Below, in pieces: positions 8,850 to 55,755 of a DNA stretch of 64,000 nucleotides. The first letter of the stretch is position 1. Every line of letters starts with the position of its first letter. The stretch spans positions 1-64,000 of IMG/VR virus record IMGVR_UViG_3300043446_004437; one strand, given 5' to 3'. Both the position numbers and the translations under genes were made by a program. Below the pieces are notes generated by a model, which had not been told where the DNA came from, did no database searches, and saw only the letters and a list, made by a program, of their open reading frames with translations.

Positions 8850-10589
8850 TTATGAAGTTCTGTAACGTACGTAGACGATACCTGATCCACCAGCACCAGC
8901 GGCATACGTTGGCGAACCATCTCGTCTACCACCGCCACCACCGCCACCACGATTAGTTGCACCAGCAGTTGCAACAGAACCACCAGCACCATTACCTCCA
9001 CCATCTTGACCAGTGCCGCCAGTGCCATTTGAACCACCATTGGTAGTGTTTGCCCCACCACCTCCACCACCACCAGCAACAGTTGTTGTTACTGTGCCAC
9101 CAGTAAATGTTGAAAGACTAAATCCAGAACCACCGTTTCCAGCCGCAGAACCCACGACATTATTCGCTCCGACAGAGCCATAACCTCCGCCTCCGCCGCC
9201 ACCTTGATAAATTGCACTACCTGCTCCACCAGCGTTACCCTGTCTTGGTGTTCCAGCACCAGCACTTGAACCAGAATTCTGAGATGCGGCACCACCACCA
9301 GAGCCACCAGCACTTGCGGCACCACTTCCAGATGTTTGACCAAATCCTCCACCTACTGCCGCAACACGACCAACAAGAGATGCAAGACCAATACGGTCAA
9401 CAGCACCACCAGCACCAACTGTTACAGAGGTGCTACCTGCTGGTAGATAAATAGTTTGTTCAACTACACCACCACCGCCACCTCCTCCACAACCAGAGTC
9501 GTTGGAACCAGGTGTTCCACCACCACCACCACCACCCACTAAAAGCACATCAAACAAACCTGCGGTTGTAACCGTTAATGTACCATCTGAGGTAAAGGTT
9601 AAAAGATTATAATTGATCCCTCCCGATACAATTGATGATGGGGAAGAAGCTCCGGTTGCAGCACCATATCCAGCAGTAGTAGCGAGGGCATCGCCTTGAA
9701 CACGGCGACGAATGTACACAATTCCTGAACCACCAGCGCCGCCAGCACGGCTGGAGCCTCCGGATGGTTGCCCACCACCGCCACCACCGGAGGCCGTGTT
9801 TGCCGAAGCGGCAGAACCTGCGGCAGAAGAACCGCCACCAGCACCACCAATAGAAGAACCACCAGCACCACCAGTAGAACCACCGCCACCACCACCGGCC
9901 CCTTTGAACAAGGATGCTCCGCCGATAAATGCGCTTACGTCTGTGCCTACACCGCCAGCGCCACCTGTAGTGCTTGCTCCATTTTGTCCAGCGCCACCAG
10001 TTCCGCCACCACCACCGCCAAATGCATTATCTGACCCGTTTCCGCCGCTGTACCCATAATCCGTCGAAGCATATGAACTTGCATATCCGGTCGTGTACCC
10101 CGTGTAACCAGCTCCACCACCGCCACACCCTCCAGTGACATGTGTCGATGTTCCAACAACAAATGGGCAACCACCAGAACCACCACCGGTCACTGCAAGA
10201 ATCGTCCCAATTCGTGACGCAGCACCAATCGTTCCCCAATCACCACTTGCAGATGCCGCACCTCCAGCACCACCCGCTCCGACCGTCACCGAGTAGGAGC
10301 CTGCGGCAAGATACACGGTGGTCTGAAGTTTTCCTCCAGCACCACCGCCTCCCGCTGGTCTGCTGCTGCTTCCCTGAGAAGCAGAACCGCCACCTCCACC
10401 GCCGAACATCAAAACATCAAACCACCCCGCTTTGGAAACAGTGAATGTTCCATCAGCAGTGAATGTATGCAACTGGTATGACACACCAGAGATCGTAATG
10501 GTGTCTCCAGTAGGGTCAACCTGACTTCCACCTGACCCAACGCCGTATTGCGTCACCAATCGTTGTGTGCGACCACCAGAAACACTCAT
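8850..10589 (-). CDS. Gly-rich virion protein, two tandem domains
   Basis: Two copies of HTFT.DGT..V..AG.FDVL..GGGG...GGSGIVY.R. Confidence 0.75.
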   Translation of the reverse strand: MSVSGGRTQRLVTQYGVGSGGSQVDPTGDTITISGVSYQLHTFTADGTFTVSKAGWFDVLMFGGGGGGSASQGSSSRPAGGGGAGGKLQTTVYLAAGSYSVTVGAGGAGGAASASGDWGTIGAASRIGTILAVTGGGSGGCPFVVGTSTHVTGGCGGGGAGYTGYTTGYASSYASTDYGYSGGNGSDNAFGGGGGGTGGAGQNGASTTGGAGGVGTDVSAFIGGASLFKGAGGGGGGSTGGAGGSSIGGAGGGSSAAGSAASANTASGGGGGGQPSGGSSRAGGAGGSGIVYIRRRVQGDALATTAGYGAATGASSPSSIVSGGINYNLLTFTSDGTLTVTTAGLFDVLLVGGGGGGGTPGSNDSGCGGGGGGGVVEQTIYLPAGSTSVTVGAGGAVDRIGLASLVGRVAAVGGGFGQTSGSGAASAGGSGGGAASQNSGSSAGAGTPRQGNAGGAGSAIYQGGGGGGGYGSVGANNVVGSAAGNGGSGFSLSTFTGGTVTTTVAGGGGGGGANTTNGGSNGTGGTGQDGGGNGAGGSVATAGATNRGGGGGGGRRDGSPTYAAGAGGSGIVYVRYRTS

Positions 10590-51898: not shown

Positions 51899-52225
51899 AT
51901 GAAAGAAATGGAATGGTGTGGATGCATGGATGCGCGTTCATGGAAAGATGGCTTTGCTGACATCTTTAGCAGGGAGCTAGTAGAAGGTAAAAGAAAAGGT
52001 GAGTTGTATGAATTGTTTGAAGTGAAAAGCTTTGAAGAATTCAAGGATGAGTTAAGTGATATTGCATGGGGCATAGGACGTATTGTTGGTGGTTTGTTTG
52101 GTAAGCCATATGTACGGATTATTGGTGATGCAAAGCACTACAACAAGGTTGTTTCTCGTATAAATGAATATGGTTGTATGAGGAGCAAGCGATTCTTGGT
52201 TAACGGCGAATGTCCAAACAAGTGA
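51899..52225 (+). CDS. Hypothetical protein
   Basis: AAGGAG SD; 108 aa. Confidence 0.65.
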   Translation: MKEMEWCGCMDARSWKDGFADIFSRELVEGKRKGELYELFEVKSFEEFKDELSDIAWGIGRIVGGLFGKPYVRIIGDAKHYNKVVSRINEYGCMRSKRFLVNGECPNK

Positions 52226-52239
52226 TTAAGGAGAACAAC

Positions 52240-52671
52240 ATGAAAGAAAAAGCGATAATCGTTGACATTGATGGCACTTTATTTGAAGAGGCGCCAGGCT
52301 GGACAATGGAGACTGATGCATGGTGGGTGGAAGAAACACTTAAGATGCGTGAGTTGGAAGTTGGGATTGGATTAATTAAGGTATTTAAGGAGATGGGATT
52401 TAAGTTGGTTTTCTTGACAGCAAGAGGACAAAGCTGCAAGAAGAACACTTGGATCAGATTTAAGAAAGCAGGCATTCATAGCTTGGTGGACTCGATGTGG
52501 CACAGGCCAATTAAGTGGAGCGAATTACCACCAGTTGAATACAAGAGGCTTATGATGCAACGGATTATGAAAAAGTATGATGTTGTATTTGCTATGGATG
52601 ATAGCGATAAGAACCTGGAAATGTTCAAGGGTTTGGGAATTAAAGTATTCGATGCAAAGAAATGGTGGTAA
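52240..52671 (+). CDS. HAD-family phosphatase (PNK phosphatase-like)
   Basis: IVDIDGTL, LTAR, K, AMDDS motifs I-IV. Confidence 0.85.
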   Translation: MKEKAIIVDIDGTLFEEAPGWTMETDAWWVEETLKMRELEVGIGLIKVFKEMGFKLVFLTARGQSCKKNTWIRFKKAGIHSLVDSMWHRPIKWSELPPVEYKRLMMQRIMKKYDVVFAMDDSDKNLEMFKGLGIKVFDAKKWW

Positions 52672-52673
52672 AC

Positions 52674-53078
52674 ATGAAAACGTTGGAACAAATCAAGCAA
52701 TACATTCTTAATACTGGTGTACTGTGGCACCTTACCACAGAGGCTAACAGTAGGCGGATAGTTAATGGTGGGATGGTGCTTACGCCTACCAACAACAGGG
52801 TTTATTTCTATGTAAATCCATCGGTGACACCATCAGACTATGATCTTTGCAGGTCGTATGTTAATGCAGATGGGGTGTATGTGTACATGCGTAACCTTGA
52901 TATGTGGCAGGTAGAGGTTACTCAAGAGATGCTTGACAACATGCATCTAGACATGGCGTTGAATGAGTTCCACCCAGGTGCAGCTGTCTACATTGAGGGT
53001 GTTGAAATCAAAGCTACCCTCCATACTCCTAGCGCACGAAAGATCGGTGTGCCATGTACTGAGTACCGCAACAAATAA
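52674..53078 (+). CDS. Hypothetical protein, possible ART/Tpt1-like fold
   Basis: LWHLTT..N..I..GG...VYF pattern. Confidence 0.45.
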   Translation: MKTLEQIKQYILNTGVLWHLTTEANSRRIVNGGMVLTPTNNRVYFYVNPSVTPSDYDLCRSYVNADGVYVYMRNLDMWQVEVTQEMLDNMHLDMALNEFHPGAAVYIEGVEIKATLHTPSARKIGVPCTEYRNK

Positions 53079-53139
53079 GGCGAAACCCTACCAAGGGTCA
53101 CTGTGGGATGACTGCCCACGGTCTGAAGAAGCCAAGTCA
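53079..53139 (+). ncRNA. Hammerhead ribozyme, type II with loop-I pseudoknot
   Basis: GGC-GAAA-stem III-GUC-stem I-CUGAAGA-A-GCC; TGACT/AGTCA pseudoknot. Confidence 0.8.
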
Positions 53140-53151
53140 AATTAAACAACA

Positions 53152-53539
53152 GTGCTACTGTTCTTTACTTGCTGTCCAGGTTGTTAAGTAAACAACAAAC
53201 AACAAGGAGAAAAACATGCACATATTGTCAGAAATCATCCTGGTGCTCTTCGCCGTATCGGTGATTGGCATCTTCGTTCTCACCATTGTTGGTGAGGTGG
53301 CATGGAGCTTGCTGGCTATTGCCGGCAAGATCAACAGGAAGTACGGTTCCTACGAAGCGGTGAAGGCTGCTGCGTTTGGGGTGGTGTACTACATGCTGCT
53401 GGCAAGTCAGAGTAACTCAACGTTTGTCGTGTGGTTTCTCACAATCTTCATGACATTGGGTTTTCTGAATCGTGTACGACAGAAGGCAGTAAGTAAGTAA
53501 GTAAGTAAAACCTGGACAGCAAGTAAAGGACAGTAGCAC
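53152..53539. repeat. 31-bp inverted repeats (53152-53182 and 53509-53539) enclosing one gene
   Basis: 30/31 complementary; the single difference is a G.U pair on the + transcript. Confidence 0.9.
53216..53500 (+). CDS. Small membrane protein
   Basis: 94 aa, about three hydrophobic helices, AAGGAG SD. Confidence 0.7.
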   Translation: MHILSEIILVLFAVSVIGIFVLTIVGEVAWSLLAIAGKINRKYGSYEAVKAAAFGVVYYMLLASQSNSTFVVWFLTIFMTLGFLNRVRQKAVSK

Positions 53540-53562
53540 ATAAACAAACAAAGGAGAAAGAA

Positions 53563-53808
53563 ATGTCAGCAAACCCTGAGCAGCAGGCTCGTGACGCCGT
53601 CATGAGCAAGTTGAAGATGATCAAGTCCTTGGACTTGACCCCAAATGAGTTGGAGTCCACCGAGCAGGAGGAGATCGAGTACCGTGCGATCTACGAGCTC
53701 GTGCTCAACGAGGGCATCGCACGTGGTTTCGAGCCTCGCGTGGTCTGCGCGATCCTTGGTCAGGCTCTCAACCTTGCTGCTGCAACCTGGTGGATCAGCC
53801 GGAAGTAG
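53563..53808 (+). CDS. Hypothetical protein
   Basis: AAAGGAG SD; 81 aa. Confidence 0.7.
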   Translation: MSANPEQQARDAVMSKLKMIKSLDLTPNELESTEQEEIEYRAIYELVLNEGIARGFEPRVVCAILGQALNLAAATWWISRK

Positions 53809-53822
53809 CTGATTGCAATAAA

Positions 53823-53887
53823 AGTAACCCCTGGGGACTTCGGTCCCTGGGGGTTTCTTTTTTATGACTAGGGAAAAGGTTTCTAGT
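53823..53887 (+). repeat. Cassette copy 5
   Basis: UUCG hairpin, T tract, ACTAGGGA-AAAGG-TTTCTAGT. Confidence 0.8.
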
Positions 53888-53914
53888 TTACAGTTAAACA
53901 AAGGAGAAAAACAA

Positions 53915-54217
53915 ATGATGAAACTAATTGAAGTTCGTCGTGACAACGAGGAGACGGAAATTCTTCTGCTCGATGTCATTTCAACCCATGACGAATGGGA
54001 AAAGATGAACGAAGAAGAACACAGGCGAGTCGATGAGTTGCTTGCTAACCAGCGAAACGACGAGTCCGGCATGCTCGTCGCTCGAGACCCAGATGATGGG
54101 TCTATGATCATCTTCCCCGAAGATACGGTTGTGGCAACACTTGACAAGTACAACTTTGCGACTGTCGTCTGGGCTGGCAAGTTTCCAAATTTTGTGTGCA
54201 GAATTTTGCGTAAGTAA
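53915..54217 (+). CDS. Acidic hypothetical protein
   Basis: AAAGGAG SD. Confidence 0.65.
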   Translation: MMKLIEVRRDNEETEILLLDVISTHDEWEKMNEEEHRRVDELLANQRNDESGMLVARDPDDGSMIIFPEDTVVATLDKYNFATVVWAGKFPNFVCRILRK

Positions 54218-54228
54218 TCGCAATCATC

Positions 54229-54296
54229 GTTGCAATGCAGTGAGATAGCATAAGAGTTGGTTCGTCCTGCTTGTGCTATCAACTCTGTTGTGCAAC
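54229..54296 (+). ncRNA. Structured RNA motif, copy 1 (long hairpin with 3x4 internal loop)
   Basis: GATAGCATAAG/CTTGTGCTATC helix; homologous to 54637-54709. Confidence 0.6.
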
Positions 54297-54325
54297 ATCA
54301 ACAGATAACAGAAACAGAGATAACA

Positions 54326-54625
54326 ATGGCATTGTACAAGACAATGAACAACAAAGAAAAGCGTCGTCACACAGCCGAGTTTGTTGGCAAACTTTGGAAT
54401 GAGTCAGACCGACTCGTATCCGAGGCTGGCAAAATCGTGCTTGGTTGCATTCATAGCGAAGTGCAACTTGCTGGCGACAAAGAGAATCCACGCAACATCA
54501 AGTTCGACCTCAATGACGAACTCCGTGATGTCGTCGAGGCTTTCCGCACGAACTACATACTCATCAGGCACTACTCGAAGGTTCTTGGCGAACTGGATGC
54601 GTTGGTTGCCGAGGAGCAGAAGTAA
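54326..54625 (+). CDS. Hypothetical protein
   Basis: 99-aa ORF between the two motif copies. Confidence 0.6.
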   Translation: MALYKTMNNKEKRRHTAEFVGKLWNESDRLVSEAGKIVLGCIHSEVQLAGDKENPRNIKFDLNDELRDVVEAFRTNYILIRHYSKVLGELDALVAEEQK

Positions 54626-54636
54626 CCGTAATCCGA

Positions 54637-54709
54637 TTCGTACTCGGTGAGAGCGCACAAGAGATTTCCACACTAGGTATCGCTTGTGCGTTCAACTCTG
54701 TGGTATGAA
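54637..54709 (+). ncRNA. Structured RNA motif, copy 2
   Basis: GAGCGCACAAG/CTTGTGCGTTC helix with compensatory changes. Confidence 0.6.
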
Positions 54710-54761
54710 CCATAGACACAAGTTTGCAAATGCAAACTCGTGAACAGACAAGGAGAAACAA

Positions 54762-54953
54762 ATGGCTAGGATCAAGTCGGCCACCACGATCAACCCCAAG
54801 CGGTTGCGCAGGCCCAAGCACAGGGAGCTCTTGCAGCTCTTGCCCATGATGGAGTCCCTCCACGCGATGAACGGGTATGGCATCCGTACTCCAGAGGACT
54901 ACCGCCACCACTGGCGCAAGCCAAAGAACTCAAAGCCCAAGCTCAAGAAGTAG
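54762..54953 (+). CDS. Small highly basic protein
   Basis: AAGGAG SD; K/R-rich. Confidence 0.65.
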   Translation: MARIKSATTINPKRLRRPKHRELLQLLPMMESLHAMNGYGIRTPEDYRHHWRKPKNSKPKLKK

Positions 54954-55031
54954 CTGTCGGCTTAAAATCGCAAACTACCCAAGGACAAAGTCCTCCTGCC
55001 ATTGAGCAGGTAAAAAGGAGGTGAATTAAAA

Positions 55032-55313
55032 ATGAGCGACAAGACCTACACTCTCAACGAAATCGTTGAGTCAGTCAGGAAGCACTACAACTTTCTGTTT
55101 TGGCAGACGAACGGCGAGCGAACGACTGCTTCAGCTTCTGAAGCACTCCTCGTACTTGCTGTTATCGCCGGCCTTGACGAGGCAGCACATGCCAAGTGGA
55201 CGGTTGCGGACATCACGCAGATTCTTGTGGACGGCAACGTCATGCCACAAGAGGAGGCGCAGAAGTTCGCCACCAGCTGCGTTGATGAGTACAACAACGT
55301 AACGTTGTACTAA
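55032..55313 (+). CDS. Hypothetical protein
   Basis: AAAGGAGGTG SD; 93 aa. Confidence 0.7.
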   Translation: MSDKTYTLNEIVESVRKHYNFLFWQTNGERTTASASEALLVLAVIAGLDEAAHAKWTVADITQILVDGNVMPQEEAQKFATSCVDEYNNVTLY

Positions 55314-55322
55314 GAAAAACAA

Positions 55323-55389
55323 AGAATAACCCCTGGGGACTTCGGTCCCTGGGGGTTTTCTTTTTTATGACTAGAGGAAGAGCCTCTAG
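55323..55389 (+). repeat. Cassette copy 6
   Basis: UUCG hairpin, T tract, CTAGAGG-AAGAG-CCTCTAG. Confidence 0.8.
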
Positions 55390-55445
55390 CAAACCAAGGG
55401 CTTTGCCCTCCTGCTTTATGGCAGGTTAAAGGAGGTGAACTGAAA

Positions 55446-55589
55446 ATGAAAGTCAACACCTACGCAAGCGAGCGTGGTTACGGCAACTTCTGCGATGCAT
55501 GCATCCAGAGGGAGTCCGAAAACCTCGTGCAGGTGGAGTTCGTCTGTGAGACGGACGCACCGTGCGCAGGCTGCTCCGAAAAGGAGTAG
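55446..55589 (+). CDS. 47-aa Cys-rich protein
   Basis: AAAGGAGGTG SD; CDAC and CAGC. Confidence 0.65.
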   Translation: MKVNTYASERGYGNFCDACIQRESENLVQVEFVCETDAPCAGCSEKE

Positions 55590-55663: not shown

Positions 55664-55730
55664 AAGATTCCCCTGGGGGCTTATGCCCCTGGGGGGTCTT
55701 TTTTTTATGACTAGTGGATAGGCCACTAGT
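55664..55730 (+). repeat. Cassette copy 7
   Basis: Hairpin, T tract, ACTAGTGG-ATAGG-CCACTAGT. Confidence 0.8.
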
Positions 55731-55755
55731 TTATGCTCAAACAAAGGAGAAAACA

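What the first reader, a model, noticed from the sequence alone, without database searches (positions are those of the whole stretch)
53152..53539. A membrane-protein gene looped out by 31-bp inverted repeats
The arms differ only by a G.U-compatible change, favouring an RNA stem like pre-rRNA processing stalks. Cutting it would release, or allow circularisation of, a one-gene mRNA. It starts 12 nt after the hammerhead. A DNA invertible segment or miniature mobile cassette is the alternative.
Basis: partly seen in the sequence, partly recalled or inferred. Interest (0 to 1): 0.62.

Follow-up and report, generated by a model that had tools for sequence, protein, structure and literature searches.

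The report
Portable one-gene cassette with inverted-repeat ends
A small membrane-protein gene in an uncultivated 216-kb phage sits between two conserved 31-base inverted repeats, and relatives carry the same repeat-to-repeat unit in other genomic surroundings, so it is a portable gene cassette; whether its ends work as an RNA stem or as DNA ends is still open.

Summary
Arms 53152-53182 and 53509-53539 are 31 nt, complementary at 30 of 31 positions, unique in the window, and not expected by chance. They enclose one complete cistron: a leader with a Shine-Dalgarno site, a 94-aa hydrophobic ORF, and stops in all three frames.

New here: three other lineages from independent metagenome assemblies carry the same unit. 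Two of them (L074; L010/L048) show both arms. The unit has three different surroundings, and homology to the window starts and stops at the outer ends of the arms.

The arms differ at 10% of positions, against 45% at synonymous sites of the ORF, so they are under selection. Pairing is kept (one compensatory change, three wobble changes, one C.A mismatch). Once relatives are included, the G.U argument no longer tells the strands apart.

The neighbouring hammerhead-like element is a separate module. It occurs without the cassette, and the cassette occurs without it.

No inverted orientation, second copy, target-site duplication or recombinase was found.

Best reading: a portable, self-contained expression cassette whose ends pair in the mRNA as a likely RNase III target or clamp. 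The main rival is a transposon-like DNA element. Processing was not tested.

The parts
53151..53539 (+). The whole portable cassette: the unit conserved between lineages
   Evidence: Homology between the window and L010/L048/L012 begins at 53151 and ends at about 53538. The flanks are unrelated: 37% and 49% identity, at the level of chance.
53152..53182 (+). Left arm of the inverted repeat (IR-L), in the 5' untranslated part
   Evidence: It is 90% identical to the L010 arm, 97% to L014 and 94% to L074.
53183..53215 (+). Cassette leader: two TAA stops (53185-53187, 53189-53191), an A/C-rich tract and the AAGGAG site (53204-53209)
   Evidence: Read. It matches L010 at 32 of 33 positions and L014 at 33 of 33.
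53216..53500 (+). ORF94, a small hydrophobic (membrane-type) protein with no known family
   Evidence: hydropathy; dN/dS 0.37. Pfam and PHROGs give no hit. Only four protein clusters were found among 5.8 billion proteins, and no further real relative among 1.84 billion representatives.
53489..53508 (+). (GTAA)5 tract that supplies the ORF's stop codon and TAA stops in all three frames just before IR-R
   Evidence: Read. It is partly conserved in L010 and longer by one unit in L074.
53509..53539 (+). Right arm of the inverted repeat (IR-R), in the 3' untranslated part; it ends 11 nt before the Shine-Dalgarno site of the next gene
   Evidence: It is 90% identical to the L010 arm.
53078..53139 (+). 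Context, not part of the cassette: a hammerhead-type-II-like element directly after the stop codon of ORF138
   Evidence: Rfam RF02276, 29.5 bits, below the gathering score of 37. It is nearly invariant in relatives that lack the cassette.
53563..53808 (+). Context: ORF81, the downstream gene of the same operon, followed by a terminator at 53826-53855
   Evidence: In relatives its homologues are preceded by no cassette or by other cassettes.

Best explanation
The 389-bp stretch 53151-53539 is a self-contained, portable one-gene expression cassette in the variable early region of an uncultivated phage of about 216 kb. It consists of IR-L, a leader with its own ribosome-binding site, a 94-aa membrane-protein ORF, stops in every frame, and IR-R. 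The two 31-nt arms are a selected part of the cassette and travel with it.

The most likely role, which is inferred: both arms lie in one + strand transcript and pair into a duplex of about 30 bp. The duplex loops out the whole cistron and leaves the ribosome-binding sites of ORF94 and of the next gene free. Such a duplex would insulate the cassette from whatever transcript it lands in. It is also long enough to be a substrate for the host's RNase III. Cutting there would detach a one-gene mRNA with base-paired ends from the neighbouring messages.

Shown here: the repeat; its conservation; its coincidence with the cassette boundaries; its three contexts; and the fact that the cassette always lies in the direction of transcription. 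Inferred: pairing in vivo, cleavage, and any effect on stability or translation.
For: (1) The repeat is real and not a chance match.
(2) The same unit, with both arms, occurs in L074 and in L010, L011, L012, L013 and L048. L014 and L015 show the left arm before the contig ends.
(3) It has three contexts. In the window it lies between the hammerhead-like element and ORF81. In L074 it lies between the hammerhead-like element and an ortholog of window gene 49892-50458. In L010 it lies between a terminator-plus-hairpin module and a terminator. Homology breaks at the outer arm ends.
(4) The arms differ at 6 of 62 positions between the window and L010, against about 31 of 67 synonymous sites (Fisher p = 4e-6). 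The leader differs at 1 of 33.
(5) Pairing is kept: 29 consensus pairs, none broken, one compensatory C-G to U-A change and three one-sided changes to G.U.
(6) No terminator-like site lies between the arms, and the cassette always runs in the same direction as its flanking genes and terminators.
(7) The arms lie outside the ORF and stop 21 nt and 11 nt before the two Shine-Dalgarno sites. The predicted folds contain the stem.
(8) The arm core is single-copy in the 216-kb contig. It was found only beside ORF94-family genes in the viral, metagenome and genome collections. This fits a gene-specific element better than a spreading transposon.
(9) Precedents exist for paired repeat ends as RNase III targets (Correia elements, PMC2649163) and for 5'-3' UTR pairing in a bacterial mRNA (icaR, PMC3868564).
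Against: No transcript data exist, so pairing and cleavage are untested.

The strand-specific signal is not significant. Three of four one-sided changes are + strand wobbles. The fourth (arm position 15) is a C.A mismatch in L010 and L074, and the duplex energies for the + and - strands are equal there.

One coincident double change among 3 + 3 substitutions is expected by chance about 27% of the time (my calculation).

Only three independent lineages show both arms.

The arms are more conserved in sequence than a 31-bp helix would need, and homology breaks exactly at the arm ends. Both are what DNA ends recognised by a protein would also show.
Confidence: 0.45

Rival explanations
1. The arms are terminal inverted repeats of a very small non-autonomous DNA mobile element, comparable to a MITE with a passenger gene or to the 439-bp mycobacteriophage MPME elements. 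A transposase or recombinase encoded elsewhere would move it. Pairing in the transcript would be a by-product, or a second use as in Correia elements.
For: Homology between lineages starts and stops at the outer ends of the arms in unrelated flanks. The arm sequence itself is conserved well below the synonymous rate. The size and layout resemble MPME elements (439 bp, short inverted repeats, one small ORF; PMC3029335). Relatives have the hammerhead-like element followed directly by a leader with no cassette.
Against: No consistent target-site duplication: the flanks are ...AAACAACA / ATAAACAA... in the window and ...CTAGTTA / GAAACCCC... in L010. There is a single copy in the 216-kb genome, and no copy with other cargo in any collection. 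No transposase, integrase or invertase domain was found in about 48 window ORFs scanned. ORF94 is a hydrophobic membrane-type protein and an unlikely transposase. No strictly orthologous empty site was found, because the downstream genes differ.
Confidence: 0.28
2. The segment is an invertible DNA switch: site-specific or homologous recombination between the arms flips the gene on and off.
For: The 31-bp inverted repeats flanking 326 bp fall within the size range of known invertible segments (my own knowledge). The phage encodes a RecA-family recombinase at 47667-48638.
Against: The orientation is the same relative to flanking transcription in all 10 assemblies that contain it. The segment holds a complete promoterless cistron rather than a promoter or alternative gene ends. 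No promoter-like site lies inside it. No invertase was found.
Confidence: 0.05
3. The repeat is a passive scar, for example an inverted duplication made when the gene was inserted, and has no function.
For: Recombination in variable phage regions produces repeats. The function of the arms was not tested.
Against: Both arms persist in lineages whose ORFs differ at 45% of synonymous sites, while the arms differ at 10%. Pairing is maintained, including by a double change.
Confidence: 0.07
4. Hammerhead cleavage plus the stem leads to a circular one-gene RNA.
For: A hammerhead-like element lies 12 nt upstream. The stem would bring the two ends together.
Against: There is only one ribozyme candidate, and it scores below Rfam's threshold. 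It is a separate module: present without the cassette and absent beside the cassette in L010 and L048. No RtcB-type ligase was found in the window ORFs scanned.
Confidence: 0.03

Closest known systems
Pre-rRNA processing stalks (long-range stems flanking 16S and 23S rRNA, cut by RNase III)
   Same: Two complementary segments hundreds of nucleotides apart enclose a complete functional RNA. The duplex is long enough for RNase III.
   Different: The enclosed RNA here is a protein-coding cistron in a phage operon. The stem is nearly perfect and 31 bp long. The unit is portable between genomic contexts. Cleavage is not shown.
Correia repeat enclosed elements of Neisseria (PMC2649163)
   Same: Inverted-repeat ends of a small mobile unit lie in transcripts, pair, and are bound or cut by RNase III, which changes expression of adjacent genes.
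   Different: Correia elements are 100-155 bp, carry no gene, occur in hundreds of copies and have target duplications (my own knowledge). This unit carries a gene, is single-copy, and shows no duplication.
Mycobacteriophage mobile elements MPME1/2 (PMC3029335)
   Same: Ultra-small (439 bp) phage-borne elements with inverted-repeat ends and one small ORF, found at different sites in related phages.
   Different: MPME repeats are short (11 bp, my own knowledge). Their ORF is thought to be the transposase, and precise pre-insertion sites are known. Here the repeats are 31 bp, the ORF is a membrane-type protein, and no exact empty site is available.
PeSL promoter-terminator cassettes and modular shuffling in T4-type phages (PMC2839356, PMC4122927)
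   Same: The surrounding region is built the same way: small orphan genes separated by repeated composite modules of terminator plus conserved motif plus hairpin. Gene content differs between relatives.
   Different: PeSLs are direct repeats that mediate exchange by homologous recombination. This cassette is bounded by inverted repeats of its own, and in the window it sits inside an operon, not between PeSL-like modules.
5'-3' end pairing in bacterial mRNAs (icaR, PMC3868564; hok fold-back inhibition, my own knowledge)
   Same: Long-range pairing between the two untranslated ends of one mRNA. In hok the product is a small hydrophobic membrane protein.
   Different: In those cases the pairing hides the ribosome-binding site, or an antisense RNA takes part. 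Here both ribosome-binding sites stay outside the duplex, and no antisense promoter was seen.

Membership tests
RNase III-processed long-range stem (processing-stalk type) | Two complementary segments that form a duplex of at least about 20 bp around the released RNA | tested here: met
   31 nt, with 30 Watson-Crick pairs plus one G.U. The stem is present in the MFE and centroid folds.
RNase III-processed long-range stem (processing-stalk type) | Both segments lie in one transcript | tested here: inconclusive
   No terminator-like site lies between 53078 and 53826, and the genes are co-directional. No transcript data.
RNase III-processed long-range stem (processing-stalk type) | Pairing conserved in relatives, with compensatory change | tested here: met
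   29 consensus pairs, none broken; one pair changed on both sides and three wobble changes in 4 sequences from 3 lineages. Statistically weak.
RNase III-processed long-range stem (processing-stalk type) | Cleavage by RNase III in vivo or in vitro | not testable with these tools
   Needs RNA end mapping or an enzyme assay.
MITE / TIR transposon (including Correia and MPME types) | Terminal inverted repeats at the exact ends of the mobile unit | tested here: met
   Homology breakpoints coincide with the arm ends.
MITE / TIR transposon (including Correia and MPME types) | Target-site duplication or another constant insertion footprint | tested here: not met
   The flanks in the window/L074 context and in the L010 context share no direct repeat. 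The A/C-rich similarity in the window is explained by leader sequences.
MITE / TIR transposon (including Correia and MPME types) | Several dispersed copies, or the same ends around other cargo | tested here: not met
   The 216-kb contig holds only the two arms. In the metagenome and genome collections, only ORF94-family cassettes show two arms, and the rest are single chance hits. These were exact-match searches, so diverged copies could be missed.
MITE / TIR transposon (including Correia and MPME types) | Presence/absence polymorphism at an otherwise identical site | tested here: inconclusive
   L077 and L083 have the hammerhead-like element followed directly by a leader, without the cassette, but with a different downstream gene.
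MITE / TIR transposon (including Correia and MPME types) | A cognate transposase in cis or trans | tested here: not met
   None among about 48 window ORFs scanned. The remaining 152 kb of the contig was not scanned.
Invertible DNA switch | Both orientations present in the population | tested here: not met
   One orientation in all 10 assemblies. Raw reads were not examined.
Invertible DNA switch | An invertase nearby, with promoter or alternative-gene logic inside the segment | tested here: not met
   No invertase domain was found. The segment holds one complete cistron and no promoter-like site.
PeSL-bounded module of T4-type phages | Cassette bounded by direct repeats of a composite terminator/promoter motif | tested here: not met
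   Such modules fill the region and flank the cassette in L010. In the window and L074 the cassette lies inside an operon without them.
Hammerhead ribozyme type II (for the neighbouring element only) | Rfam gathering score, conserved core and three stems | tested here: inconclusive
   29.5 bits against 37. The CUGANGA and GAAA cores and stems I and III are present. Stem II has 3 bp, with an extra A after the core (read). The element is nearly invariant in relatives.

The most novel reading that the evidence does not exclude
A new class of phage gene cassette that carries its own RNA insulator. The inverted-repeat ends would form a long-range duplex wherever the cassette lands. Host RNase III would cut the duplex and release a one-gene mRNA with paired, protected ends. 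The same ends would define the unit that moves between genomes. That would make it a protein-coding counterpart of an rRNA processing stalk and a mobile element in one.
Probability: 0.25. Interest if true: 0.7.

Novelty: new variant of a known kind. Interest (0 to 1): 0.5.

Why it matters
Phage genomes gain and lose small orphan genes constantly, but how such a gene stays expressible after landing in a foreign transcript is poorly understood. A cassette that carries its own leader, stops in every frame and a clamp of paired ends would be a natural solution to that context problem, comparable to engineered insulators. If the arms are instead DNA ends, this would be a very small gene-carrying mobile element in a large phage with no visible transposase. 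Either outcome can be tested with a simple reporter construct, because the unit is only 389 bp long.

Tried and rejected
- **Rfam.** At gathering thresholds the whole window gives nothing. In E-value mode the only relevant hit is the sub-threshold hammerhead.
- **tRNAs.** None found.
- **Cultured phages.** DNA similarity of 51500-55500 to GenBank phages gives no match. The RecA gene is below 60% identical to anything there, so no annotated relative exists.
- **ORF94 family.** Pfam and PHROGs give nothing. A profile search of 1.84 billion representatives adds no real relative. Distant homologues could therefore not be used to test covariation of the arms.
- **ORF94 against other slot occupants.** It is not similar to the small membrane ORFs that occupy the same slot in L077 and L083.
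- **P0002.** This protein is 69% identical, but its contig has no DNA on file.
- **Arm core in the collections.** The viral, metagenome and genome collections add only L048 as a new two-arm locus. All other hits are single chance matches, for example L053 inside an unrelated gene.
- **Hammerhead 3' half in viral contigs.** Only the two known contigs match.
- **Other repeat-flanked genes.** My own scan of the window and 13 related loci found no other gene flanked by a long inverted repeat. The scan was stringent: it also missed the L010 arms.
- **Target-site duplication.** Considered and rejected. The TAAACAA motifs either side of the cassette in the window are absent in L010, and they match the general A/C-rich leader.
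- **Other families considered.** Integron attC, retron a1/a2 repeats and a type I toxin-antitoxin were considered. The window shows no integrase, reverse transcriptase or antisense promoter.
- **Not run.** The count of structure pairs was not used, because it would have needed a long typed structure string. fold_alignment was used instead.

Full report
**Source.** The window is the first 64 kb of IMG/VR contig IMGVR_UViG_3300043446_004437 (216,024 bp). A second contig from another sample, IMGVR_UViG_3300046804_002698, is 100% identical over the 10.3 kb compared. The window encodes a portal protein, a large terminase, a capsid protein, tail fibres, RecA and a ClpX-like ATPase. It has no DNA relative among deposited phages. 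It is therefore an uncultivated large phage. Genes from about 49.7 kb onwards run on the + strand. They are small, mostly orphans, and separated by repeated composite modules: a G+C-rich terminator hairpin, the motif TTTTTTATGACTAG and a second hairpin whose stem covaries. This resembles the hyperplastic regions and PeSL modules of T4-type phages (PMC2839356, PMC4122927).

**The observation.** Arms 53152-53182 and 53509-53539 are 31 nt long and complementary at 30 of 31 positions. No comparable repeat exists elsewhere in the window. Shuffled sequence gives no match. The layout, read:
- ORF138 ends at 53078.
- A hammerhead-like element runs from 53078 to about 53139.
- Twelve nucleotides follow, then IR-L.
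- The leader has two TAA stops, an A/C-rich tract and AAGGAG.
- ORF94 runs from 53216 to 53500.
- A (GTAA)5 tract puts TAA in all three frames.
- IR-R follows, then the leader and AAGGAG of ORF81 (53563-53808).
- A terminator lies at 53826-53855.

Both Shine-Dalgarno sites lie outside the duplex. As RNA, the stretch folds with the full long-range stem in both the MFE and the centroid structures (z = -6.45). ORF94 is strongly hydrophobic and evolves under purifying selection (dN/dS 0.37). It has no family assignment. Its family is tiny.

**What relatives show.** Protein searches followed by retrieval of the encoding contigs gave three further lineages.
- L014 and L015 are 94% identical in DNA to the window over 53001-53376 (90% over the 815 nt aligned) and have the same upstream context. 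The contigs end inside the ORF, so only IR-L is visible.
- L074 has the same upstream context (phosphatase gene, ORF138 homologue, hammerhead-like element) and a complete cassette with both arms. Its downstream gene is an ortholog of window gene 49892-50458, not ORF81.
- L010, L011, L012, L013 and L048 are five assemblies from JGI, NCBI and Logan. Their cassette is 77-78% identical to the window's, with both arms, in a quite different place. A terminator-plus-hairpin module lies directly upstream, 95% identical to window 51422-51543. A terminator lies directly downstream.

In the alignments, similarity to the window begins at 53151 and ends at about 53538. Outside those points it falls to the level of chance. 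The repeat-to-repeat unit is therefore what is shared, and it has at least three sets of neighbours.

**Are the arms selected?** Between the window and L010, identity by segment is:

| Segment | Identity |
|---|---|
| Arms | 90% |
| Leader | 97% |
| N-terminal half of the ORF | 82% |
| C-terminal half of the ORF | 65% |

Synonymous sites differ at 45%. Six differences in 62 arm positions against about 31 of 67 synonymous sites gives p = 4e-6. A passive scar is thus unlikely.

Pairing is retained. RNAalifold puts 29 pairs of the stem in the consensus with none broken. One pair changes on both sides (C-G to U-A). Three change on one side to G.U. Arm position 15 is U-A in the window but C.A in L074 and L010.

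With relatives included this no longer discriminates.
- L074 and L010 each have one + strand wobble and one C.A mismatch. Their duplex energies are the same for the two strands: -52.2 against -52.4 kcal/mol in L074, and -46.0 against -46.3 kcal/mol in L010.
- Three of four one-sided changes favour the + strand, which is not significant.
- One coincident double change among 3 + 3 substitutions is expected in about 27% of cases by chance.

Several facts favour an RNA role.
- The arms always sit in the untranslated ends of a cistron that runs in the direction of transcription.
- They spare both ribosome-binding sites.
- In L010 they would pair the 5' and 3' ends of a monocistronic transcript.
- They are tied to this one gene family, single-copy in the genome, and absent around any other cargo.

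Other facts favour a DNA role.
- Homology breaks exactly at the arm ends.
- Sequence conservation goes beyond what a 31-bp helix needs.
- The unit resembles the 439-bp MPME elements of mycobacteriophages (PMC3029335).

Some facts count against a DNA role.
- No target duplication is visible.
- No transposase, integrase or invertase was found in about 48 ORFs scanned.
- No second copy exists.

The two roles are not exclusive. Correia elements of Neisseria are mobile repeats whose paired ends are RNase III targets in mRNA (PMC2649163).

I place the RNA-stem cassette first at 0.45 and the transposon-like element second at 0.28. An invertible switch gets 0.05, because all 10 assemblies show one orientation and the segment holds a promoterless complete gene.

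**The hammerhead.** The Rfam hit (RF02276, 29.5 bits) is below the gathering score of 37. The cores CUGAAGA and GAAA and stems I and III are in place. Stem II has only three pairs, and an extra A follows the core (read). Even so, the element is almost invariant in L077, L080, L081 and L083, whose upstream protein is only 65-69% identical. The only differences are three or four bases (one an indel) in the loop of stem III, one base in the loop of stem I and one in the 3' tail. It is therefore a real conserved element.

In those loci it is followed after about 12 nt by an ordinary leader and another small membrane-protein gene, with no inverted repeat. In L010 and L048 the cassette has no such element beside it. 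The two are independent modules, so the idea of ribozyme-assisted circularisation has no comparative support.

**The slot.** The place in front of ORF81 homologues is itself variable. It is empty in L057, L058 and L066. It holds a 125-aa membrane ORF in L009 and L068, and a 149-aa ORF in L070. The L009 insert is bounded by direct repeats of a structured element of 80-99 nt, which is the PeSL style of shuffling. The ORF94 cassette is the only one bounded by inverted repeats.

**Verdict.** What is present is a portable, repeat-bounded, one-gene cassette with conserved ends. Its mechanism is still inferred. It is a new variant of known kinds (phage orphan-gene cassettes, repeat elements that pair in mRNA, processing stalks), and it can be tested with a 389-bp construct.

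Noticed in passing
window 53078-53139; L077 760-822; L083 1046-1108; L074 1330-1392: The hammerhead-type-II-like element scores below Rfam's threshold but is almost invariant across relatives whose neighbouring protein is only 65-69% identical. It always sits directly after the stop codon of the ORF138-family gene, which in turn follows a HAD/PNKP-type phosphatase gene. A possible pseudoknot joins UGAC (53109-53112) with GUCA (53136-53139).
   Followed up: partly
window 50486-50561, 51172-51244, 51477-51548, 51837-51875, 53822-53893, 55324-55396, 55664-55736: Repeated composite modules: a G+C-rich terminator hairpin, TTTTTTATGACTAG, and a second hairpin whose stem covaries between copies. They resemble the PeSL terminator/promoter modules of T4-type phages and separate the small + strand genes.
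   Followed up: partly
L009 3719-3752, 5414-5512, 5898-5996, 6319-6417; window 49773-49830: An unknown repeated element of 80-99 nt (GTCTGATTGGATCGAC ... TGTCCATGA ... plus a hairpin) with compensatory changes between copies. As a direct repeat it flanks a 125-aa membrane ORF that is absent from L057, L058 and L066. Rfam gives no match.
   Followed up: partly
window 49892-50458 (+): This gene has no ATG, GTG or TTG in frame after the upstream stop. Its reading frame begins at ATC, 7 nt after AGGAGG. The L074 ortholog (1815-2384) starts with ATG. This may be a non-canonical start codon.
   Followed up: no
L057 3892-4001; L068 3518-3895; L070 506-955: The slot in front of ORF81 homologues is empty, or holds a 125-aa ORF or a 149-aa ORF, in different relatives. 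It is a hot spot for single-gene cassettes; the 125-aa ORF, and the unrelated ORFs that follow the hammerhead-like element in L077 and L083, are small membrane proteins.
   Followed up: partly
window 52210-52671 (+): A stand-alone HAD phosphatase of the polynucleotide kinase-phosphatase type (PF25109, 9e-13) lies two genes upstream of the hammerhead-like element, and this order is conserved in L074, L080, L081 and L083. An RNA-end-healing enzyme next to a possible self-cleaving RNA may be more than coincidence.
   Followed up: no
window 8850-12259 (-): Two adjacent paralogous genes (both PHROG 2295) lie in a stretch with G+C of 0.48-0.55, against about 0.34 on either side. The window as a whole is very uneven in composition.
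   Followed up: no
L014 and L015, both ends: Both contigs begin and end with the same primer-like sequence (GTTTCCCAGTCACGATA and its complement). This looks like untrimmed random-amplification primer, so the last bases of these contigs are not phage sequence.
   Followed up: no
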